Assembly (NCBI GenBank): GCA_964106915.2
Contig: OZ066914.1
DNA from: Podarcis gaigeae
Taxonomy: Eukaryota
Length of the DNA: 64,000 bases
Reading direction: 5' to 3' (one strand)
A program made the translations under genes and the position numbers. Below the pieces are notes generated by a model. It ran no database searches and was not told the origin of the DNA. It was given only the letters and a program-made list of their open reading frames with translations. Positions 457 to 31,537 of this stretch are shown in pieces (positions within the stretch are counted from its first letter, which is position 1; every line of letters starts with the position of its first letter).

Positions 457-1024
457 CTTAAAAGAAAAAGAAGAAAAATTTTGTAGAAACAAACACACAT
501 ATATTCAGCTTCTCTGTGTCCCCTATTAAAAGGGGGCTTTCTTCTAAAGCTTCCAGAGCTCTGTTAAAGAAGTCAATAAGATCTTTCCCCGTTTGATCAT
601 TTCCTAATTTTAGGAAATCAGTTGACCTGGCCATCTGCAAGCATATTAGAAAATACTTTTTGGCCCCACAGTTAAGTGTCCAGTCAGTCTGCTTTGACAT
701 TTTCAAATTGTAATGGGATGCAGTATTTTATTTTTATGTTCAAACTTTATCTAGAAGTGCTGAGAGGGGGAAAGATATAAACTGGAAGGAAGAAACAAAA
801 TGATGTTCTGTTCATCATTCTTTCCTTCCTTCAAGTGCAGCCCCCCAAAACAAGTCAGGAATGGCTTCCCTATTTTATACACGAAGAGTCAAACCACTAT
901 GTTTAAGCAACTGCTACTAGGACTGGGTTTTTAACAGGTAACTAACAATCACATTTGGATAGAAAATTAGCAATAACTTTCTGAATAAATTGTTGCGATC
1001 AGACTGGCAGAAGAAACAACTTTA

Positions 1025-1312
<288 letters not shown>

Positions 1313-13000: not shown

Positions 13001-13636
13001 GCATCTGTTGAAAGAGAAAGTGTCTAAATCCTATAGAAGGCTTTAGTCTTATAAGGAGGGGCGAGAGGAGGCGGAGGGGGGGGGGAGATAAGAAACAGTG
13101 TCTCAGTGATCCCTAAAACCGCTAAATCACTGGAGAATTTCTCCCGGATAGAGATGTCTCTTTTTGTTCTGTCAGCCCTCATGTATCCATTATTTTATTC
13201 ACTGCTGCATGGCGTTTATCAGATTGAGACCATATTTGTCCCCCTCTGAGACCTAACCTTGCCTTATGCTTTTGGAGTAATGGACTCTTAAAATCCAGGA
13301 ACACAGAGGCAGCCCGGGGAGGGGGGGCACCCGAGTCCCCCGCATGAATATTCCAGGGCAGAGGCATTTTATTAATTTTAATTTAGTGGTGCAAAGGCTT
13401 TAAGTGCGCGCCTCTCTCTCCTCTTCTCTCCCCCCCCCCCCAGCGCCTCAGCCAAGGCCTCTACGCCCCCTCCCCCGCTTTCCTCGTCCACATTTTTTTG
13501 AGGTTGACTCAGGGCCAAGAATATAGTAGCAGGCCCCCATCCGCAAGCTTTCCCATTCATTTGTTTTAACTATATGGCAACTGGTGATTAATGGGGGTCT
13601 TTGAAACCCTGGCACCCAGATCCTATACACGTTGGC

Positions 13637-13708
13637 AAGAAGAAGAAGAAGAAGAAGAAGAAGAAGAAGAAGAAGAAGAAGAAGAAGAAGAAGAAGAAGA
13701 AGAAGAAG
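13637..13708. repeat. (AAG)24 microsatellite
   Basis: Perfect trinucleotide run; explains the poly-E and poly-L ORFs. Confidence 0.97.
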
Positions 13709-14619
13709 ATTATCAGTGGGCCTTACTTCCATGTAAATGTGCTTTAGGGAGAGCAGTTGAATACGCTCTGGGGGAAACGATCCAGCCACAGTTAAGCACT
13801 TTTAAGATTGTAGTCCCATGGGCGTTTAATGGGAAGCTGGACTCATTGTCTAAAACGGGGCTTTTCTTCTGAGTAAACCTCTTACCAGCAGATCTCACTG
13901 GTGTAAATGGGATGGATTGATCCGCGCGCTCCCATTAAAACCGGTGGGATTTACAAGGGCTTAACTACAGTGGCTGAATCCTGCCCCTCGTCTCCCTCCA
14001 CGGGCCCTAGCCAAATACTGCCTGAAATCCACCACAAAAACCGAAAACAAAATTCTGTGGATCCAGCGCTCCTGTCTGGAGAATTTAGAGAGCAAACCCA
14101 CGCCCTGTCCCGCACCGGTTAATCTTTAACCCCAAGGATCTCCTCAGTTTTTCTGCGGGGGAAGGTGTGTGCTTCGGTTTAAAATTTAAATTTTAAAGGA
14201 TGAGGGTGGGGGCTGTTGTTTCAGGAAACTATAGAGGAATAAGACAACGCGTCTTTTCCGAAAGGGCTTCACGCCCAATTCCCAATGATTCTGCGACAGA
14301 TCTTACTTCATTTCAAAACAACAACAACAACAACAACAATATCTGGGAAGGGAGAGAATCCCGATTTTAAAATAACTAAATACGCGCCTGGCGATGAAAT
14401 GTACCCTCGGTTCAGATATTACAGCAACGGACTTCAAGCAACCTGTTATCTCACTGCAAACACGCACGCACCAACCCGAGTGGGTGGGTGTGGAGGAAGA
14501 AATATTGAGCTCAGCAAACTGAGGGTGAGATATCAAAATTGGACCTTTCGACACCCAGAGAGAGAGTTTATTGACTCCCGCCCGCCCCCGCCCCCGTTTA
14601 CCCTTGGTGGGGCTGCATA

Positions 14620-19174: not shown

Positions 19175-19253
19175 GGNNNNNNNNNNNNNNNNNNNNNNNN
19201 NNNNNNNNNNNNNNNNNNNNNNNNNNNNNNNNNNNNNNNNNNNNNNNNNNNNN

Positions 19254-19295
19254 NNNNNNNNNNNNNNNNNNNNNNNNNNNNNNNNNNNNNNNNNN
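19254..19295 (-). CDS. PAX6: Inferred position of alternative exon 5a (42 nt), hidden in N-run 19177-19324
   Basis: Not readable. Both flanks (gtaagttctcat| and |ccgcttccctgatgcag on the gene strand) match the recalled human flanks of exon 5a, and the 148-nt gap fits 29+42+77 nt. Confidence 0.6.
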
Positions 19296-20266
19296 NNNNN
19301 NNNNNNNNNNNNNNNNNNNNNNNNATGAGAACTTACTTAGAGAGGTTTTTCTTTTCTTTTTCTTTCTTTTTCTTTTAAAAAATATTACATTTGTGGCCCT
19401 ACACGCTACAAAGGTGAGATTTTTAATTTTTTTTATTTAAAACCCACTTTGAAGGGGGGAGGGGGATAAAAACTGGAGAAAAATGTCAGATATTGGAAGT
19501 AATGTTAATATAGACATCATCAGCTCAGTTTCCAAAATACTCAGATTTCGGGAAGAGGGAAGGATCGGGAAGGTGTGGGTGGATTATAAAACGGGAATGA
19601 TACTGTATCCCTAAGCCAAATCCCCGGCCAAATCGTTTTCTCATGAGCTTCTAGGGATAAACAGGCAGCAATTTCAAAAGCAACCAGCGTTGCTTATTGC
19701 TTATTCACATATACATATATATACATACATAAATTTGCATGCAGAAACTTTCAGTTACATGGAGGGGGAAGCGGACAGTTTAACACCCCCCTGACTTGCA
19801 CACGCTTGCTTGGAAAGAAGTCCCTTAACCAATCGGGGGGCTCTGCCTTCCAAAGAAGCGTCCTTAGGATCGGGCGCATTGCATCGGTCAGGTCACTCCA
19901 GCCAACTAATATTCGCCAATAGAATACAGGCGTACATATGGAAATAAGGCATATCCGGTTGTCAAGCAGCCATTGACTTAAGGAAAAAATAGATAGCTCT
20001 ATCCCCGTGGTTTTGAGAAGCAGATTGATGGCCATTTAATTTTTTAAAGAATCCTTCTCTCTGCCCCTCCCCCTGCCCCAAATAGGCTGGAGAGGGAAGG
20101 TTGCAGCTACAGAATAATACCCTTCCCTCGCCCACCCACCCCCAGGATAGGCTGTGTCCGGTTTTTTTTTTTTTTTTTGTCTTGTTTTGCTTTGGTTTGT
20201 TCCTTCCTTCCCCAAGCCAGGCTGGCGTAGGGTTGCTGGAGCTGGGAAGGCGAGGCGCATTTTCAC

Positions 20267-20397
20267 CTGCAGGATTCGGGAGATGTCACACGGCCGAGCC
20301 CCGCTGTGGGCGAGTTCCACGATTTTCTGTCGGGTTGAATCTGGCAGCGGCCGACCGTTGACAAACACGCCGCCGAGCTGGTTGACGCCGCTGTGAC
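20267..20397 (-). CDS. PAX6: PAX6 exon 5 (paired domain): (S)[43 protein letters not shown]
   Basis: acgcag acceptor, gtgaaa donor, 131 nt. Confidence 0.98.
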
Positions 20398-20838
20398 CTG
20401 CGTGGTGGGGGGAGGAAAACAAGGACAATGGAAGCCTCGGCTACCTGAGCTGGAGAAGGACGACCTGGGGCGCCCCAGCTCCCTCCTCCCCGGTCAGGTT
20501 GCTGCTGCTGCTGAGACAGAGAGGGGGGGGAGGAGGGGAAAGGGGTCGGGATGGCGGGGGTCGGTGGGGAACAGCGAGATCAACAACCAAACAACCCAAA
20601 TCAGGAGCTTCTCTGGTTCTGCTTTGGAGTTGGCAAAGAGAAAAGCCCCACTTAGCGCGGGCACAGGCGAGCCAGACCTATGGCTGTGGATCTCAGGTAT
20701 GAAGACTGTACACACACACACACAAAAGATGCACACACCTCCTTAGGCAAAATCACTGCAGCCAGGTAGCCACCGATACTCCAACAACCATGTATTTTAC
20801 CAGTTGCAAAGCACGTTCTATACAGGAAAGTCATTCAT

Positions 20839-20890
20839 AGATAGATAGGTAGATAAATAGATAGATGATAGATAGATGATAGATATAGAT
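20839..20890. repeat. Imperfect (GATA)n microsatellite
   Basis: agatagataggtagataaatagatagatgatagatagatgatagat. Confidence 0.85.
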
Positions 20891-21561
20891 ATACATATGA
20901 TCATCAAAGTAAAATTCCACCACCACAAAGACTTTCTCCCCTTTGAACTGGTCTCCTTCCCTTCCTCCCCCCCCCCCAAATCCTCCGCCATCCCCCCTTC
21001 TAAGCTCGACGCTGACTCCTCTCTATGGCTCCATTCACGGTCCCAGCTCTGCCTCTCAAGCCCAGAAGAGCAACATTTGGTTACACACTTTCACTCAGAG
21101 ACATCCTTTCAGCAGCCTTGGCACCAGCCGGCGAGTGAAGGGCACACAGCCGACTGTGGGGGAAAGGGGGTGGCTGGGGGTGGGGTGAAGGAAAAACCGT
21201 CCCCTCTCTCTTCCATGGGGCGGCGGGAGGTGGAAGATGCCTTTCGAGACCCAGCAGCGCGTGGACCCAACGCAGCCTGGAGCCCATCCACAGAAAGTCC
21301 ACCTCGCCCGCCCGCCCCACCACAAAAAACACAAAACCTGCCTGGATCAGAAACTGGCTAAGCCAAAAACAGGCGCCTCCTGCCCTCCGTCTCTCTTAGC
21401 CCCCTAAATGCCACCAAGATCCCCACACCCCAAATTCCTCGTCTGGAAAAGAAGGCGAGGGGAAAGGGAATTGTTGCTATTATTTTAAAAGGAAAATAAA
21501 TCGGAGGGGTCTGTTCTGAGCTTTGCGACAGTCCCTAAGCATCCTCCTAGCTACAGCTCAC

Positions 21562-21650
21562 TTGGCCAAAAGCAGCGCGAATGGATTTCTTAAAAAAAAA
21601 AATGGTTCGAAAATAATTCCCCAACCTGCAGCTTGAGGCTTTGGAGGCAA
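21562..21650 (-). other. PAX6: Candidate exon alpha (P-alpha first exon)
   Basis: Donor GGCCAA|gtgagc at 21561, just downstream of the neuroretina enhancer in intron 4; 5' end uncertain. Confidence 0.4.
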
Positions 21651-21729
21651 AAGGCTCCCTGGAGAAGGTCTGGGCTCGCTCTCTCTCTCCCTCTCTGTGT
21701 GTCTCTCTCTGTTCTGCTCTCCTCCTCTC

Positions 21730-22035
21730 TTTGGAGCCTCCTGCTAAATTGANNNNNNNNNNNNNNNNNNNNNNNNNNNNNNNNNNNNNNNNNNNNNNNN
21801 NNNNNNNNNNNNNNNNNNNNNNNNNNNNNNNNNNNNNNNNNNNNNNNNNNNNNNNNNNNNNNNNNNNNNNNNNNNNNNNNNNNNNNNNNNNNNNNNNNNN
21901 NNNNNNNNNNNNNNNNNNNNNNNNNNNNNNNNNNNNNNNNNNNNNNNTGTGGCAGACGTGTCACTTTATGACAGTGCTCCGCTTTTGAAAATTGCATCGT
22001 CACGACAAACAGGAGCATGATAAAAACGACCCTTT
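21730..22035. promoter_or_regulatory. Intron-4 neuroretina (NRE/alpha) enhancer, ultraconserved core masked
   Basis: Gene-strand TTTATCATGCTCCTGTTTGTCGTGACGATGCAATTTTCAAAAGCGGAGCACTGTCA..AAAGTGACA..CTGCCACA before the N-run (21753-21947) and TCAATTTAGCAGGAGGCTCC after it match my recollection of the mammalian alpha enhancer. Confidence 0.8.
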
Positions 22036-25000
22036 CTGTCCGGATTTGGGTATCACTCCGACGAGATTGAACTCTACTCGTTTCCCCTTCGAGGGGAAGC
22101 GACTTTTTAAGGTAGCCACGGGGCCAGTGCGGACACAACCGAGGGGGCGCGCTGCCTCCTCGATAGATCCGAAGTGACATGCGGTTTGGAGAGCGATGGA
22201 GGGAAGGGAGGGTGAAGGAGGAGGGGAGGGGTGCGGGGGGAAAGAGAGAGAGTGGCAGGAGCGTAAAAGCCACTAGAGAACCGACCAACGTGTGCGGTTT
22301 AAGAAATATAGGGGGGGGGGCACAAGGCACAGATCCTCTTTTTCTCTCTCTGCCTCTCGGATGGACCTGCTCATCTCTCTCCCCACCCCCCAACTATGTG
22401 AAGAAGGGGAGGGAGCTTCCATCCCCGGGTCGGGGAGGTGGGGCGTCAAATGCCCCCTTTTTAATCCTCCCAATCACCACTCCTAGGTTAGGTGGTTCTG
22501 GATACATTCCCCTTCCCCACCCCACTCAACTCCCTGTTTCTTCCCCTTACCTTCACCCTCCCTCTCCATTGCCCTGGATTGTTGTGGAATCTGGGTTGCT
22601 CTCTTCTCCAGTCTCTCAGGGACCCGATCCAGCCTCGGCAAGCCCTTATCAGAGACCAGTTGTTTCTCAGAGGGGTGGTGGGGCGGGGGGGTGTTTCAGA
22701 GAGATGAGCACGTGCTTCATTCTCTCTCACGGAAACCAATGGGACTCCCAATCCCGTGGCTGTGATGTTTCCTTGGGGCCTGGGGATCCACGGAGCCAGA
22801 TCTCCCTCTCCCTCTTTCACTCCCACACACGCATGGGGCTGTGGACAGGAGGCCCTTTGCCCGCAGCCCCGCCAGAAATGTATCTCTGCGCGCGGCCCAA
22901 CGAGGAATGCCAAACTCCCAAGTTGCGCGTAAAAAGGTTAAGCCTTAATCAATGCCTTAATTTCCCTGGAGAGGGGAGGCAGTTCGAGCCCAGTGGCAGC
23001 GATTAAGCGCCTCGCCTTTCTGGGGCTAGGCTTCTAATAGGAAAGCATATGGTGTCAATTTGGAGCCCCGGCACCACATACACCCAGGAGTTGTTCGCAC
23101 AAAGCCTGCAGAGCCGGCGGCGACCTTTGCGCAAAACCCGGGCTTCACCCGGACGGGATCTCCTCGCTCCACTCCTGCACGGGCTGAAGGGGAGGGGGAA
23201 GAAAAAGCGAGCGCCAAGGGCCGGCATCGAGGCATCTTCTGGCCCTCCGAGGAACACTTTGGGATGAGCTGTGCCTCAAGGCCAAGGGCCCAGGCTAGGA
23301 GAGAGGAGAGCTCGGCCTCCATGCTTTTCTCCCTGCTCCACCCTGGCCGCGTCTCTTTCTGATCAGCGCTAAGGCTTAGCAAGCCGTCGGTTTAAGAGAG
23401 ATCCCAGGCGAAGGAAGCAACAGAATAAATACAGGCCTTCCCGCCGGAAAAGTTCATCATCACGCTGCCACGGTCCGCCACGGGGAATCGCCCGAAAGAA
23501 TCCCAACACACAGGGCAATTTAAAGGCGCGCTCGATCCCCACAATCCGGTTTGTATGCTTAGAAATGCGTCCACCCCACGCCCTTCTCCCACAGTCCAGG
23601 AGCTGAGACCTTCCTGCAAAGACCCCCAAGCCCTTTCTAGGAGGAAATCGAGGGGGGCCTCGGAAAGCCGACGCCAGCAGCTCCACAGCGAACCGCCTTT
23701 GGCTAGGGAATCCCCGCCAAGGATTTCAACGCGACTGGCGGCCAAAGGGAGACGAAGAAGGGCCGCCGCCATGAAGACCCGGCCCCGCTTACTCGGAAGA
23801 AAGTCCTGCCAGAGTTCAGTAGGGCCAACTCCCAAGTGAAGAGAGTGGCAGCTAAAGAAATCCTGATAATCCTGGATCCTGCACGAAAGGCCAGAATTAT
23901 AGCCCAGGCCGAGTCAACTAAACTCTGAAGTACCTTCGCTTTAGGAAGAAATACTTGGCCGGCTTTTGACTTCTAAGGCAGCATCTTTAAACATGACAGC
24001 AACTCGCTAAGGAGCTCAACATTATCTCACGGAAGGGGCATTTTCTGGGCAACCAGGCCCTATTCCATCCATCCAAAGCTATGCACTTTTAAGTCTCCCT
24101 TGGCCCCAGCAGGAGAAATTTAAGCAGGTGCTGCAACTCTCTGGTGGACTCCTGAGAACTTAAAAGTGCATCCCTTGTGACTGCTGGATTGTCCCTTAGC
24201 CCATCCGACCTCCCTACACCCAGGAAAGTCGACGGGACTTAATTTCCCAATCAAAGTCCGCGGGAAGGCGGCTGATCTGCTCGGCCAGCGCGCTAAATAT
24301 ATTTATCAGGAAGTGTCACAGATTTCCTTTCCACCAACACGCTGAAAATCAGCGGAGTTGCCGGTCCAGAGTGCGGGTCAAACTGCCGCAACCTTGCGAG
24401 ACTTCGCTTGGAAATCCAGACAAGGCCCTCTGAGAAGGACTGCTTTGTTTGCGAGTTCTACGCAACTGACACCTTATCCCAGTGGGCTGATCCACTGTGG
24501 GTACCATCGGGCTCCCCACAAACACAAAGAGGGCTGGGGGTGTGGCGGGATTGCGCCCGGTCCCTTGGCTTCTAGAGGAATCTACGTCCAAATAAGGGCG
24601 CTTTGTGAGAAGCCGCTGTCACTGGGGATTCCCTCACGGGAGTGGGGAGAGGATAGCAAGACAGGCCTATGTAGGGCGTCCCTCACACGCAGCCTAGCCA
24701 AACCAAGTCCTCTCGGAAGTCAATCCTATTGGATTCTATTAATTTGACATCCAAGCGCACAACTTTATCAGGAAGCCGTTAAGCAGCTGCTGCCAAGCTG
24801 GTCTGGAAGACGATTGAAAGGGACATAATCTCTCATCTTCCTGAGTTTTCACTAAGTCTGGTGGGTTCAGCTCCAGGGTTCCCTTCCCAGCCCGACCCCC
24901 CGGCCCCAGACCACCACAAGTGACTAACATTTTCTCAGCAAAGGCCTTCAGTCTCGATCGCTTTGACATTCGCCCCCCCCTTTTTTTTTTTTGCAAATCC

Positions 25001-26396
25001 CCACATTCCTCCAGCCAGAAGAACACAGAACACGGTTAGTGACGTGGGAACTTCTTGCGCGTTTGCAACTTGCTTGGCGGACGATTGATTGTGTGCAATC
25101 AAGGGAAGTTCTGGTTTATTAAAAAAAAAAAATCCGATCGAGGCAGTTAATTCCTGTTCGAGGTCGCCTTGGCTTCGAAACCCGTTGGAACTGATTGCAA
25201 TGAAACAACCACAGACAGACGCGACTGTCCTCTGAATCCGGGTTCGGTGACCCTCGCTTGCCCTGCCTCCTGGACGGCGCTGGAGTTTATTATGTCAACA
25301 CATCCAAACTGTGAAGCCATTGGGGGGCTCTCCCAACCTTTCCGCTTTGCCAGCCTCTACAAATCTAACAGGATAGATCTATAAGCACCCATCACTGCAA
25401 TCCTAAACACACTTGCAGAAACCAGATCGATTTTTAATGAGACTGGCTTCCAGAAAAGTTGCGCTTTCTCACGGGAGCATTAAATCGAGTTGCATTCTCG
25501 ACGGACTTTCCCGCGGCCACTCAGATTTATTTCAACTGCACCACAACAAACTGCCCCCTTATTGTCACCTCTCGCGCAACCCAGTAGATCTCTCGTCCTG
25601 GGTTACAAATCCATTTAAATCCATCTACCTTTTTCGCCCCAAGAATTTTCAAATCTACACAAGCTTCCCTGCGCCAGACATTTAGGTCATCGAGATTCCA
25701 TCACCGCGAGATTTTGTGAGGAGAGTCCAACCAAAAGAAGACCAAAGAAAATGATCCGATCATGTCTTTCCTTCCCATTCACAGGACTTTCCTTACATCG
25801 ACACCCTCCCCCCCCCAAAAAAAATCCCCACTCACAAAGAGCTGATTTACTCCAGTGGCTGCAGATCCGATCCATGAGCAGTGGGATTCTGGAGTGGTCA
25901 ATTCCACACTCAATGGGTGGCCAATCGCTCCAGACGCGCCATCCGCAAAGCAGCTCGCTCACGCCTCCATCTTCCCAAGCACAGTTACTTGGAAGTAAGT
26001 CCCGTGGAAACGAGAAGGGCACTTACATCCCCTCCCCAAGTAAGGGTGCTTCGGATCACGGCCTCGCAAATCTCCATTCGGGAAAAGGAGCGCGTCGCTG
26101 CCCGGTCTCCTGTTGCAAGAACTACCAGCTGCATCTCTCTTAGGCGAAGGACTCAAATGGCAGCCACCAAGCGCCGGGTGTTGTAACTCTCCTAAGCTTC
26201 ATAACCCCCCTTTTCCAGAAGGAGCCACTTCTGCTATGATTAGTATTTTGAAAATGTGAAATTCTATACCTTCGCCCGCCTCTCTACCCCCACCCCACCC
26301 CACCCCCGCCCAGCACACACAAACACTACCCACCCCAATAATACACCGACATCCTCAAGCCGGCAGAGTCGTGAAATAAGAGGGAGAGTCACTTAC

Positions 26397-26406
26397 TGTT
26401 CTGCAT
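26397..26406 (-). CDS. PAX6: PAX6 exon 4, coding part (ATG CAG AAC A; MQN(S))
   Basis: CCACCATG Kozak context, gtaagt donor at 26396. Whole exon 4 is 26397-26451 with acceptor ctcatag. Confidence 0.96.
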
Positions 26407-26854
26407 GGTGGATTGATGGAGCAAGATCCCACGTGGCTCGCGGATAAGATTCTATGAGTAATAAAACAGGCTTTAATCAGGGGAGGGAAGCTCGCGGGCA
26501 GGTAGTTGCGCTGCACTGAGTGCCCAGGTCTCCAAGGCCTCGTTGCTTTCTGCTGGCCTCCCAAATGATGTCAAATATTATATATATATATTTATATATA
26601 TCATGCGAAAACCCTCCCAGCCCCAGAGCCTATATAACAAACCTGGAAACGTTTCAACCTAGCAAGTCTAGTTATTTTTAAAAAATAAATAAATAAATAA
26701 ACATAAACCAGCCGTGGCCTTCTCCTCGGCAAACTGGCTGTGGCAAGTGAGGGCTCGTGATGTACCAAGGAAAATGGGTCGGAGTGTGAGAAGTCTTCTA
26801 GTGATGGGGGGTGGGGGGACGGGACGGGGAAAGTAGAAGGTGCTTCCAACTTGC

Positions 26855-26931
26855 CTGATTTATGAGCGGACTCTCCTCTCTGGCAATTTAACGACTCACA
26901 CATCTGCGTAGCGCTTGTTAAATTCTTCCCG
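26855..26931 (-). other. PAX6: PAX6 5' UTR exon 3 (77 nt, GC donor)
   Basis: ttttcccctcatcctag|CGGGAAGAATTTAACAAGCGCTACGCAGATGTGTGAG...AATCAG|gcaagt; same length and motif order as recalled human exon 3. Confidence 0.85.
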
Positions 26932-28281
26932 CTAGGATGAGGGGAAAAGTATATTAAAAGTATATTAAGCACTTTTAAATTTGCGTTCCCTAACCTCCTC
27001 CCCGCCACCCACCCCAGTCATAGCCGCCTCGCATTTGGAGGTGGGGGTGGGAAGAGAAAGGCAGTTCAAAAGATTCAGCAAGAGAGAGAGAGAGAAAGAG
27101 AGAGAGAGGAAAAGATGCCGAAGTTTTTTCCAGCACGCCTTACTGAAGCGCCTCCTGCCCATAGGAAGGAGTTCTGATCTGTGACACCTTTTGTGTCCGT
27201 ATTTACAAACAGGACCTCGACTTTAGTTGGGCTTGGATTCGCTGAAGGGAGCCGGCGCGGCGTCCTCGCGCTGCACTTTGGGGCCAAAGGACTCTTTCTC
27301 TGAAAAGAGGTGGCCAGCAGAGTTTGTGGGCACTTTCGCTCCCTGGGTCCCCCTACCCCCGCTGCAACCTCTCCAGGTTGCTTATGGGCAAATCCTGCTC
27401 TCTTGCATGGGGCGTGGGTGGGTGTGCTGGGGGCACTTCTTTCCCTTTTTAAACCACACATGTTTGGGAGCTACTTCACTCTGGTGATTCTTTTCGGGGC
27501 ACTACTAACCATCCTGAAAAAAACAAAACCCGAAGAGGGAGAGAGAAGTGGGGAGGTGGTGGGGGAGAGAGAGAGAAATCCACTTATTGTGATTAACTTC
27601 TTTTTTGGTCTTTAGATCTTCCCCTTTTTCACTGTACTGTGACACACGCTGTCTACCTCGCCTCAGTGCTTTAAAAAGTAAGGCCAGGAGGGGGTGAGGG
27701 CTGGGAATACAAAGCCTCCAGAAGGCGAACAATGGCCTCCATTTTACTCCCCTACCCAAACGCCGAGCGCAAGACCCCAGCCAGGCAGCCTCCTCCGGAA
27801 CGGGCCGCGGCGCAGCCTCCCAACTCCGCGTTCCCAACGACCCTCCAACTTACAAAGGAGCGGGTGCGAGGGGGGGCACACAGCGGCCTTCCTGCTCCCT
27901 TCTGTAGGGCCCGCCTTGACCCACGCAGCCTGGCCAGCCCCAAGCCCTGCCTTGGGTTGTTTTTGTTTTTAAACCGGCCTTTTGAGGAATAAGACGAGGA
28001 ATAATGCAACAACAAAAGAAGTTCTGCAGTTCTTGATGTTCTGTGTTTCATGTATTTATTTATTGGGTCCCAGCGCTTTCTTTTTAGGTTCCCAGCCTAG
28101 CAGGGGGAAAATAGAAAAGTAATTTCTCGTTATAAATATCTGGAGGTAATTATGTTACTGGTGTGAGTTGTTAGGGGTTGTAAAAAGATACAACAGCGCA
28201 GTGGGGTGCTCAATTGGGGTGAGACAATTACAATAAAGAACCTATTCAAGAGGTTTTGCTTTAAAAAAAAGAGGGGGGAGA

Positions 28282-28286
<5 letters not shown>

Positions 28287-28318
<32 letters not shown>
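28287..28318. repeat. (AG)n microsatellite
   Basis: Direct read. Confidence 0.9.
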
Positions 28319-28322
<4 letters not shown>

Positions 28323-29409
28323 GTAAAATAATGAAATAGTGGCAGCCTTCATTTTATTCGCCCCCCAAACCTCCCCCCTTTATTTTTATTTTTTTGGAAG
28401 CTTTAAAAAATCTCTTCTCTTTCCAGGCTATAATGAATATTAATTTTATTCTTTCTACCTAGAAAAAGAGGCATCTTCTTCCGGGTCCAAAACGACTCCG
28501 GTATGATTTTTTAAAGTGCTTTTTCCCCCAAAGCCATCTACGTTCCATTAAAAGGGGGAAAAGAAAATCAACACGGAACAAGGACTCCTCTCGCAGCGTG
28601 AATGAGGCGCGCGGTGGTAAATATTTACTCCGCTTTGGAGAGGCACCTGATTAGCAGCCGAGCCAAGCGCCCTGGACCCTTCTCCGGAAAAAGCCGGTGC
28701 CTCCAGTCGCCCAGAGTTTCCAGAAGGCGCCCCTTTAACACACCAAACACGTCTGCCGGGACACACGCTTGCACGCAGGACAACCGCTCCAAGACAGAAA
28801 GACGCCGAAGCGTGAGAAGCAACTAGAGAGAGAGAGAGAGCCTTTTTCGCCCAGGCGCGGGGGACTGTTATTGTGAACACTTCCCAGCTATACCAACTGG
28901 CGAAATGCATTTTAAGAACTCACTTTGGCACTTATGGGTGTTAACAAACAAAGACGGCTAGCTGGTTTCAGGCACCAACAAACAAACCGAGGCGTTATTC
29001 TGATGAATCCGAGACAGCAAAATTGGAGTAGGGGGGAGTGAAGAGATAAAAGAGAGAGAGAGAAAGATTTGGGCTTTTGGGCTATTTTAATTACAAGGTG
29101 GACTGAGCCCTACAACCACCAGCAAAACCGACCCTTCCTCCCTTCCCCCACCCGGAAGCGCAATAATGGTGGAGTTTCTCCCTTTGCCAGAAAGTAGCTC
29201 CTTTTTACTGAATTTTAAAAATGAAATTATTCACAAAGAGATGCAGGTAGGCAGAGAGCAGCCTCGATCGAATTTCCCGGTGAGATTACAAACCCTAAGC
29301 GAAACGCAACGCCTCCCTGGTCCCGGCTAGGCCTAATCTGCAAATTCCTATTTAAATCTCCAAATCTGGATCTAATCTGATCGTCTTTGAGATTTGATCC
29401 TCCCCTCCG

Positions 29410-29610
29410 CTGCAAACATAATTAGCTATTAAGATGACAAACGTTTACAATCCCGGGCCGAATAAGCAAAAGATAAACGCTAATCCATTGGTGTGGAGAC
29501 GTTTGCTAAAGGTCACCGGCTATAAAAATTTATTGCCAAAGACCACAATTATTATTTTAGGCCTATAAAGACGCTCAGCCTCCAGCCATAATGAATGGCT
29601 TCACTTTCTG
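29410..29610. promoter_or_regulatory. Candidate intron-2 conserved element
   Basis: Dense TAATTA, TGACAA, AGATAA, TAATCC and TTTATTG motifs in unique sequence. Confidence 0.3.
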
Positions 29611-30952
29611 GAAGGAACTGCTCGGTGCTCTCGACTGGGCCTGAAAAGTTTACTTGTAAGCCTGGTCGCATCAGGAGTTTCTCCCCATGTATTTTAAACC
29701 CCTGATTTGAAGACGCCAGTGGTTTATTATTCCCTCCCCACAGTTAGATTAGTTTAAATAGAGTTAAAGAAAACAGACAGAAGTTTATTCTTGCACTTGG
29801 GCAGCCCTTGCCTATGCACGTTCACTCAGAAATGCTTTATTGTTTCAGTGACGTTTATTCTCACATTAAAGTGTGCGTAAAATCTCAGCCTCAATGTATG
29901 GCGGTAGAGGTGGAAACTCTGAAGAAGAGAGGAGGTGGGGAAATGAACTTTTTTGCGGGTTGCCCTGCATTTTCCGTGAGTCTGGGCGAAACTTCACAAC
30001 ATCCACCCAACAAGGAAATGAGATTTCGAAAATCCAAAATCAAACCAAAACAACAGCAACAGCAACAAAAAACCCATTTGCTACTTGAAAAGGAAGCAGA
30101 CAACATTCTCTAGCCTGGAAACTTGTGGAGAATGGGGTGGGGGGAGCTATTGATCGCAGATTCTTTGGAGCGCAAAACTCAGGAGACTTAAACGATCTCG
30201 GAGATTTGAGTGAAGTGCTGTAGGGGGGGTGGGGGTGGCAAACAGCGCAGAGAGAAAAATGTTGTTGTTTTTGTGGCTGTTTTTGTTTAAACAGTTTGTA
30301 CTTCGAGCCAGGTAGTGATCAAGTTAGAAAGTTCTGCTCATTCCCAGTCTCGTCGTGGGCAAGTTTGGGGAGATCTCGCGGCTGCTTGATTGAGAGTGAC
30401 AGTCCTTCAGCTCCGCTCAGACCTTCCCGGATACAACAACTGAGACCTGACTTGGCCTAGAATGTGACTCTGTGTGTCGTCGTGTCCCCCCCCCCCCCTC
30501 CCGCGTGTCTCTCTCTTCCCCATTTCCTTAAGGCCGGTTAGTTTGAGGAGGAAAAGAGATATATAGACATAAATAAAGGGAGAAGCGAGAGTTGCCTAAA
30601 CGAAAGTCCCTCGTCAACACACACGCATAAGCACACACAGCTTCAGCTTGACGGAGATACAAAGCAACCAGGGAAAAGAAGCAGGGAATAAAGACGCTGA
30701 GCTTGGATGGACCCAGCTTCCCAAGAAAGCAAGGGCCAAGCAACGCCGTGTGGTCCATAACGCCTCCTTCACAACGACCGCAACAACAAATGCCCCTCAT
30801 AGGAACCAGGTGTGATGCATTCTCGTGTGTGTGCGCGCGCTCAGATGATCCCTACAGCTTTGGCCGTCCCTATCGCGCTGTGCCAAACGCAGCAAGCCTT
30901 TCGTGGGGCTCTGTCTAGCAGAAAGGCCGGGCGAGTCTGCTGCTGTTGCTAT

Positions 30953-30954
<2 letters not shown>

Positions 30955-30986
<32 letters not shown>
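30955..30986. repeat. (AG)n microsatellite
   Basis: Direct read. Confidence 0.9.
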
Positions 30987-30989
<3 letters not shown>

Positions 30990-31269
30990 TTTTCCCAGAA
31001 AACAGGGGCGGGGGTCGGTCCATGAAGGAGGAAGAGGAGGAAAAAGAAGAGGAGGAGAAAGAAGGCTGGAGCGAAAAGGACAAAGTTTGGAAGCCTTTGA
31101 GACTGGCATCTCGCTTAAGATCCTTTCCCGGAATGTAAGAAATGGTGTGTATGTGAGCGAAACCGGGGGGGGGGGAGAGAGAGAGAGAGAGAAGGGGGGG
31201 GGGGAGAGGGAGAGACCTGTCTAAATATTAAAATGAACTGAAGCGAGGAGAAGAAACGAGCAGACTCAC

Positions 31270-31415
31270 CTTTCTGAGGCATCCTGTCTTGTTGTCAAAG
31301 CTCCTGTCAATAGTTTTAAAAAGCGCCCCTGATTTGAAATGATGGTGCCTTAAAAAGGGTTGCCAGTAAAAGAGTTTTTCTCCACTGAAGCTGCTGGTTG
31401 TGTGATCTTGAGTTC
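31270..31415 (-). other. PAX6: PAX6 5' UTR exon 2 (146 nt), ending in uORF start ATGCCTCAGAAAG
   Basis: tctctgtctccttcccag acceptor, gtgagt donor; conserved-looking GGAGAAAAACTCT, CATTTCAAA and GGATGCCTCA.AAAG blocks. Confidence 0.9.
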
Positions 31416-31537
31416 CTGGGAAGGAGACAGAGATTGACAATAAAATGGGCTGTCACTGACTGGAGAGGGAGAAAGAAAGAGGATGTGAGCGAAGTAGGGG
31501 GGAGAGAGGGAGGGAGAGAGGGAGAGACAGAGCACAC

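What the first reader, a model, noticed from the sequence alone, without database searches (positions are those of the whole stretch)
20286..31282. UTR exon 3 as a uORF-terminator cassette: a possible splicing-controlled translational switch for PAX6 dosage
Seen: exon 2 ends with ATG CCT CAG AAA G (ATG at 31282, A at -3). With exon 3 included this uORF is MPQKAGRI* (TAA 26918-26920), short enough to allow reinitiation. If exon 3 is skipped, the 13+45 nt spacing puts it out of frame, and it runs 59 codons across the main ATG to TGA at 20286-20288, which should suppress PAX6 translation. Exon 3 also stops a second frame (TGA 26896-26898) and has a non-canonical GC donor. Recalled: human has the same 8-codon uORF, and variants that frameshift it or skip exon 3 cause aniridia. 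Inference: the architecture is amniote-wide and may be a regulated rheostat rather than only a mutational liability.
Basis: partly seen in the sequence, partly recalled or inferred. Interest (0 to 1): 0.8.

Follow-up and report, generated by a model that had tools for sequence, protein, structure and literature searches.

The report
PAX6 leader uORF ending in exon 3
This is the non-human counterpart of a short upstream reading frame in the PAX6 leader that is already published for human: it stops inside untranslated exon 3, so losing that exon blocks PAX6 translation, and nothing here shows that the loss is a regulated switch.

Summary
Every coordinate and frame in the observation checks out on the minus strand. 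The exon 2 uATG (31282) plus exon 3 gives MPQKAGRI*, with TAA at 26920-26918. Joining exon 2 to exon 4 gives a 59-codon frame that crosses the main ATG (26406) and ends at TGA 20288-20286. The exon 3 donor is GCAAGT. The N gap at 21753-21947 lies inside intron 4 and does not touch any frame.

The mechanism is already published for human PAX6 (Filatova 2021, pictured in a 2025 review): skipping exon 3 removes the uORF stop, the uORF then overlaps the coding sequence, and aniridia results. This locus is its orthologue.

Two points qualify the "terminator cassette" reading:
- Exon 3 carries its own weak-context ATG (26903) in its one open frame. That ATG opens a 71-codon overlapping uORF ending at the same TGA.
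- A stop in the uORF frame turns up in 81% of shuffled versions of exon 3, so the stop alone is not surprising.

Indirect evidence leans against it: the wild-type human minigene includes exon 3 fully, and the exon 3 acceptor here is good. The scan had no earlier finding of this on other DNA. Interest is low.

The parts
31270..31459 (-). 5' UTR exon 2. The start is uncertain: the acceptor at 31459 gives 190 nt and the one at 31415 gives 146 nt. It holds a single ATG.
   Evidence: Human exon 2 is 188 bp (PMC7093334), which favours 31459. The pyrimidine tract there is 17/17.
31280..31282 (-). uATG of uORF1, in context GACAGG|ATGC (A at -3). It lies 13 nt before the end of exon 2.
31264..31269 (-). 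Exon 2 donor GTGAGT, a consensus site.
   Evidence: U1 duplex -10.7 kcal/mol.
26855..26931 (-). 5' UTR exon 3, 77 nt. Two frames carry stops and one is open.
   Evidence: It has the same length as human exon 3. The acceptor tract is 15/17 pyrimidines.
26918..26920 (-). TAA ending the 8-codon uORF1 (MPQKAGRI*). It is in frame with the main ATG.
26888..26890 (-). Second TAA in the same frame, a back-up stop between the uATG and the main ATG.
26896..26898 (-). TGA closing a second frame of exon 3. A further TAA in that frame is at 26862-26860.
26901..26903 (-). ATG inside exon 3 in weak context (ACGCAG|ATGT), 14 nt after the uORF1 stop. It opens a 71-codon out-of-frame uORF that overlaps the main ATG and ends at TGA 20288-20286.
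26849..26854 (-). Non-canonical GC donor of exon 3 (CAG|GCAAGT).
   Evidence: The U1 duplex is -7.4, against -12.1 if the site were GT. The nearest GT, 4 nt downstream, gives only -1.5. Not confirmed by RNA.
26893..26900 (-). Possible cryptic donor TGT|GTGAGT inside exon 3. The last exon base would be 26900.
   Evidence: U1 duplex -5.5. Seen in passing.
26397..26451 (-). Exon 4, with 45 nt of leader, then the main ATG at 26406-26404 in context TCCACC|ATGC, then donor GTAAGT.
21753..21947 (.). Assembly gap inside intron 4. It is spliced out and is irrelevant to the frames.
20267..20397 (-). Exon 5, the start of the paired box. TGA 20288-20286 in the +1 frame ends both overlapping uORFs.
   Evidence: PF00292 in all relatives.

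Best explanation
This is the 5' leader of PAX6 in a non-human amniote. It carries the orthologue of the short uORF that has been validated in human PAX6.

Shown by the sequence: the uATG, 13 nt before the end of exon 2, is read into the 77-nt exon 3 and stops after 8 codons.

Inferred: exon 3 is constitutive. Because the uORF is short and the main ATG lies 108 nt further on, ribosomes can resume scanning and reinitiate at the strong main ATG. On the way they pass the weak out-of-frame ATG that sits only 14 nt after the uORF stop. On this view the uORF is a constant mild damper, or shield, of PAX6 translation.

Shown for human: exon 3 is needed because it holds the stop. If exon 3 is lost, or the uORF is frameshifted, the uORF runs 59 codons across the main ATG and PAX6 protein output falls. 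That is a mutational liability. It is not shown to be a regulated switch.
For: - The frames and coordinates are confirmed.
- For human, exon 3 skipping or a uORF frameshift turns the uORF into an overlapping one and causes aniridia. Sources: PMC7617937 Fig. 3A, PMC12822670, PMC9943669, PMC13087467.
- The published human variants c.-125dup and c.-122dup are G duplications. They fall on G residues at the matching positions of the CGGGAAG start of exon 3 seen here, and the human exon is also 77 bp.
- The wild-type human minigene includes exon 3 fully in HEK293T and COS7 cells, while c.-128-2A>G skips it.
- Exon 3 here has a good acceptor (15/17 pyrimidines). Its donor matches the consensus everywhere except +2.
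Against: - Constitutive inclusion, the GC donor and the start of exon 2 are therefore all inferred.
- Translation of the uORF and reinitiation were not tested here.
- The GC donor pairs less well with U1 (-7.4 against -10.7 for exon 2).
- From general knowledge, not tested here: GC-AG introns are more often alternatively spliced than GT-AG introns.
Confidence: 0.75

Rival explanations
1. One reading: exon 3 is a regulated cassette exon. Cells would tune PAX6 protein by varying how often exon 2 is joined directly to exon 4. That joined form carries the 59-codon overlapping uORF and is translationally nearly silent.
For: - The GC donor is weaker than a GT version would be (-7.4 against -12.1).
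- CU-rich tracts flank intron 2: 19 and 14 PTB-type motifs in its first and last 300 nt.
- The exon 2 to exon 4 join appears to be the coding arrangement in teleosts, where translation can start in exon 2 (PMC3554528). The length arithmetic for this rests on my memory of the fish N-terminus.
- PAX6 is dosage-sensitive.
Against: - No report of natural exon 3 skipping was found in nine literature searches.
- The wild-type human minigene shows complete inclusion.
- Heterozygous skipping already causes disease, so substantial physiological skipping would be costly.
- The CU tracts are low-complexity microsatellites.
- There is no structure signal around exon 3 (z = -0.57).
- The included form also carries an overlapping uATG, so exon 3 is not a clean on/off element.
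Confidence: 0.1
2. The uORF is chiefly an evolutionary leftover of the N-terminal extension that fish Pax6 encodes from an exon 2 start codon. It would be kept because the leader DNA is conserved for other reasons, such as promoter-proximal or RNA elements. On this view it has little regulatory role of its own in normal cells.
For: - In teleosts translation can start in exon 2, whereas tetrapods start strictly in exon 4 (PMC3554528).
- Here the uATG is in frame with the main ATG when exon 3 is included (135 nt, interrupted by two TAAs). It is one base out of frame when exon 2 is joined to exon 4 (58 nt).
Against: - Human variants that only frameshift the uORF cause disease. So the uATG is used by ribosomes, and its stop matters.
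- The similarity to fish peptides could not be tested with a tool-supplied fish sequence. One search returned only genomic exon ORFs.
Confidence: 0.12

Closest known systems
Human PAX6 5' UTR uORF (Filatova et al. 2021, Hum Mutat 42:1053; pictured in PMC7617937 Fig. 3A)
   Same: - The uATG is at the end of exon 2 and the stop is early in a 77-nt exon 3.
- Skipping or a frameshift gives an out-of-frame uORF that overlaps the coding sequence.
- The positions of the published G duplications fit the sequence here.
   Different: - This is another species.
- The exon 4 leader is 45 nt here, against 51 nt implied by the human numbering. That is an in-frame difference, so the frame relations are the same.
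- No functional data exist for this species.
Teleost Pax6 N-terminal extension started in exon 2 (Ravi et al. 2013, PMC3554528)
   Same: A start codon in exon 2 upstream of the exon 4 ATG.
   Different: In fish the frame joins the main ORF and extends the protein. Here it is closed by exon 3, or is one base out of frame if exon 3 is left out. The sequence-level comparison was not made.
ATF4/GCN4-type leaders (a short permissive uORF followed by an inhibitory overlapping uORF); from general knowledge
   Same: A short first uORF is followed by an out-of-frame uORF (ATG 26903) that overlaps the main start.
   Different: The second ATG lies only 14 nt after the first stop and has a weak context. 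Reinitiating ribosomes should therefore skip it at all times, so a stress-dependent delayed-reinitiation switch is not expected.
THPO 5' UTR splice mutations (exon skipping changes uORF content and translation; hereditary thrombocythaemia); from general knowledge
   Same: Splicing of an untranslated exon decides which uORFs the mRNA carries, and so sets protein output.
   Different: In THPO, skipping removes inhibitory uORFs and raises output. In PAX6, skipping lengthens a uORF and lowers output.

Membership tests
PAX6 exon 2/exon 3 uORF (human, Filatova 2021) | The locus is PAX6, with the main ATG in exon 4 followed by the paired box. | tested here: met
   The main frame reads [13 protein letters not shown].... 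Exon 5 relatives carry PF00292 and several are named paired box protein 6. Downstream exons with paired-domain, homeodomain and PST sequence are present.
PAX6 exon 2/exon 3 uORF (human, Filatova 2021) | The uATG is in exon 2 and the stop is in a 77-nt exon 3, giving a short uORF. | tested here: met
   8 codons and a 77-nt exon 3. The human exon 3 is 77 bp.
PAX6 exon 2/exon 3 uORF (human, Filatova 2021) | Loss of exon 3 or a frameshift gives an out-of-frame uORF that overlaps the coding sequence. | tested here: met
   59 codons to TGA 20288-20286.
PAX6 exon 2/exon 3 uORF (human, Filatova 2021) | The uORF is translated, and its extension lowers PAX6 translation. | not testable with these tools
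   This needs ribosome profiling or reporters. It is known only for human, from the literature.
Regulated cassette exon (alternative splicing switch) | Both the inclusion and the skipping junctions are present in normal RNA, in proportions that vary. | not testable with these tools
No paper reporting natural skipping was found.
Regulated cassette exon (alternative splicing switch) | Weak splice sites or flanking regulatory motifs. | tested here: inconclusive
   The donor is GC (-7.4) but the acceptor is good (15/17). The CU-rich flanks are low-complexity. There is one GCATG in intron 3, about what chance gives.
GC-AG intron | The donor dinucleotide is GC with an otherwise consensus site, and this is the donor actually used. 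| tested here: inconclusive
   The sequence CAG|GCAAGT fits, the 77-nt length matches human, and the alternative GT at +4 is very weak. Use of the site in RNA has not been seen.
ATF4-type delayed reinitiation leader | The spacing between uORF1 and the inhibitory uORF is long enough for reinitiation at the latter under normal conditions. | tested here: not met
   Only 14 nt separate the uORF1 stop from ATG 26903.

The most novel reading that the evidence does not exclude
Exon 3 inclusion might be physiologically varied in some PAX6-expressing cells of amniotes. The GC donor and the CU-rich flanks could make this possible. The exon 2 to exon 4 join, which appears to be the protein-coding arrangement in teleosts, would then serve in amniotes as a translational off state that fine-tunes PAX6 dosage.
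Probability: 0.1. Interest if true: 0.7.

Novelty: already known. Interest (0 to 1): 0.22.

Why it matters
PAX6 dosage decides eye, brain and pancreas development. The leader uORF is a proven disease mechanism in people and a candidate target for raising PAX6 output. Finding the same arrangement in another amniote agrees with conservation but adds little. A demonstrated physiological splicing switch would be a new layer of PAX6 dosage control, but nothing here shows one. Two details may be useful to anyone designing reporters or splice-modulating oligonucleotides:
- Exon 3 also brings in its own overlapping uATG.
- uORF1 ends only 14 nt before that uATG.

Tried and rejected
- **RNA evidence.** No junction evidence was obtained.
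- **Primary papers.** Filatova 2021, Tarilonte 2022 and Plaisancié 2018 are not held. Their content comes only through citing papers and, where marked, my memory.
- **Natural exon 3 skipping and bird or 5'-exon transcript structure.** The literature searches found nothing. The search for a PAX6 GC-AG intron also found nothing.
- **Fish N-terminal sequences.** The supplements of PMC3554528 hold no sequences. The word search with the exon 5 translation returned only unspliced genomic exon ORFs. One hit, P0007, was labelled human, and I did not fetch or compare it.
- **Big representative search.** I did not use it, because the protein's identity is not in doubt.
- **ATF4-like stress switch.** Considered and rejected on spacing (14 nt).
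- **RNA structure hiding exon 3.** Rejected (z = -0.57).
- **Alternative GT donor 4 nt downstream.** Rejected (U1 duplex -1.5).
- **Joined exon models.** These were only translated locally from window.fa for frame arithmetic. The step of searching a joined model was left out.
Full report
**What is there**

The gene runs on the minus strand. Reading the three places named in the finding and recomputing the joins from the window file confirms every coordinate.
- Exon 2 ends ...GACAGG ATG CCT CAG AAA G | GTGAGT. The ATG is at 31282 and the last exon base at 31270.
- Exon 3 is 26931-26855 (77 nt), preceded by a 15/17 pyrimidine tract and followed by GCAAGT.
- Exon 4 is 26451-26397 (55 nt) with the main ATG at 26406 in a TCCACC|ATGC context. 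Its donor is GTAAGT, so the codon AGT (Ser4) is split A|GT.
- Exon 5 is 20397-20267.
- With exon 3 the uATG reads MPQKAGRI and stops at TAA 26920-26918.
- Without exon 3 it reads 59 codons across the main ATG to TGA 20288-20286.
- The main frame reads [47 protein letters not shown].

Relatives found with the exon 5 translation all carry the paired-box family PF00292, and several are named paired box protein 6. The later PAX6 exons are visible downstream. The locus is PAX6.

**The gap**

The window has six N runs. The one inside the finding, 21753-21947, lies within intron 4 (26396-20398), far from both splice sites. It is removed by splicing. Its unknown length and the continuity across it therefore have no bearing on the uORF or main frames. 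I did not try to fill it.

**Is it more than chance?**

Not by itself. Exon 3 is A-rich. In 20,000 shuffles of its letters, 81% had a stop in the uORF frame and 93% had stops in two or more frames. The meaning of the arrangement comes from outside evidence.

**What is already known**

The mechanism is published for human PAX6.
- A 2025 review draws it as a figure: 5' UTR variants cause skipping of exon 3, which holds the uORF stop. The uORF then becomes an overlapping one and translation of the coding sequence falls (PMC7617937).
- A 2025 preprint on splice modulation names "the third exon of PAX6" as the example of uORF extension by exon exclusion (PMC12822670).
- The uORF-annotation and variant-scoring papers list the PAX6 variants as uORF stop-loss or overlap cases, citing Filatova 2021.
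- Human exon 2 is 188 bp and exon 3 is 77 bp (PMC7093334).
- The human duplications c.-125dup and c.-122dup are G duplications. Counted from c.-128 as the first base of exon 3, they fall on G residues of the CGGGAAG with which exon 3 begins here. So the uORF tail looks the same in both species.
- From memory, not checked here: the abstract of Filatova 2021 already calls the uORF evolutionarily conserved.

Exon 3 closes two frames: TAA 26920 and TAA 26890 in the uORF frame, and TGA 26898 and TAA 26862 in another. Its third frame is open and begins with an ATG at 26903 (ACGCAG|ATGT, a weak context). That ATG opens a 71-codon frame which runs through exon 4, crosses the main ATG out of frame and ends at the same TGA 20288-20286. 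The included mRNA therefore also carries an overlapping uORF, and exon 3 is not purely a terminator.

The spacing suggests how the parts may work together. This is inference.
- The uORF1 stop lies 14 nt before the exon 3 ATG. That is too close for a ribosome that has just terminated to have regained initiator tRNA.
- The uORF1 stop lies 108 nt before the main ATG, a distance that generally allows reinitiation.
- Translating uORF1 may therefore carry ribosomes past the harmful ATG.

With exon 3 included, the uATG is in frame with the main ATG (135 nt), separated by the two TAAs. The uORF1 stop lies 63 nt upstream of the exon 3/4 junction, so in principle the mRNA could be a target of nonsense-mediated decay.

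**Splice sites**

| Site | U1 duplex (kcal/mol) |
|---|---|
| Exon 2 donor | -10.7 |
| Exon 3 GC donor | -7.4 |
| Exon 3 donor if it were GT | -12.1 |
| Exon 4 donor | -6.4 |
| GT 4 nt downstream of the GC donor | -1.5 |
| GTGAGT inside exon 3, after 26900 | -5.5 |

The GC donor is the only credible donor that gives the 77-nt exon, but it has not been seen in RNA.

Intron 2 is 4338 nt and intron 3 is 403 nt. The ends of intron 2 are rich in CU repeats. Intron 3 has one GCATG, about what chance gives. The region around exon 3 folds no better than shuffles (z = -0.57).

**Is skipping regulated?**

This is the only part of the finding that would be new, and I could not test it.
- Nine literature searches found no report of natural exon 3 skipping.
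- The one direct datum is that a wild-type human minigene spanning exons 3-4 includes exon 3 completely in HEK293T and COS7 cells, while c.-128-2A>G skips it (PMC9934858).
- Heterozygous skipping already causes aniridia, so substantial physiological skipping would be costly.

I put the regulated-switch reading at about 10%.

**Evolutionary side-light**

Ravi et al. [quoted passage not shown] Here the join of exon 2 to exon 4 places the uATG 58 nt before the main ATG, one base out of frame.

From memory, the zebrafish extension is 19 residues and begins like the skipped-frame peptide here. That would mean fish join exon 2 directly to exon 4. I could not obtain a fish sequence from a tool. The paper's supplements hold none, and the exon 5 word search gave only unspliced genomic ORFs. 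This stays a lead.

- Joined exon models were only translated locally for frame arithmetic. The only window letters searched were exon 5, by reference.
- One hit was labelled human (P0007) and was not fetched.

**Verdict**

This is already known, and interest is low.

Noticed in passing
window 19177-19324: This N gap ends about 15 nt upstream of the exon 6 acceptor. Exon 6 reads [11 protein letters not shown]... from about 19160. The alternative 42-nt exon 5a is expected within roughly 140 nt upstream of exon 6, so it probably lies inside the gap and cannot be read in this window.
   Followed up: no
window 26893-26900: A consensus-like donor GTGAGT sits inside exon 3, directly after the exon 3 ATG (TGT|GTGAGT, U1 duplex -5.5). 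If used, it would shorten exon 3 to 32 nt while keeping the uORF1 stop.
   Followed up: partly
window 31415 and 31459: There are two possible acceptors for exon 2, 44 nt apart (CCCAG|G and CTCCAG|T). The upstream one gives 190 nt, close to the human 188 bp. No extra ATG lies between them.
   Followed up: partly
window 31160-31260 and 27040-27100: Long CU-rich and poly-C tracts lie just downstream of exon 2 and about 120-170 nt upstream of exon 3. The first 300 nt of intron 2 are 74% pyrimidine. They are low-complexity and could bind PTB-type proteins, or could be plain microsatellites.
   Followed up: partly
window 26407-26451 with 31270-31282: The exon 2 to exon 4 reading (MPQKESYPRATW...) resembles, from memory, the teleost Pax6 N-terminal extension. 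It is one base out of frame with the main ATG. This is the same point as note s1-692077. No fish sequence could be obtained to test it.
   Followed up: partly
window 1022-1170: The exon 12 translation reads ...[14 protein letters not shown]. I saw this only in the ORF list.
   Followed up: no
window 13600-13750: A long triplet repeat in intron 7 reads as poly-E, poly-K or poly-L in different frames.
   Followed up: no
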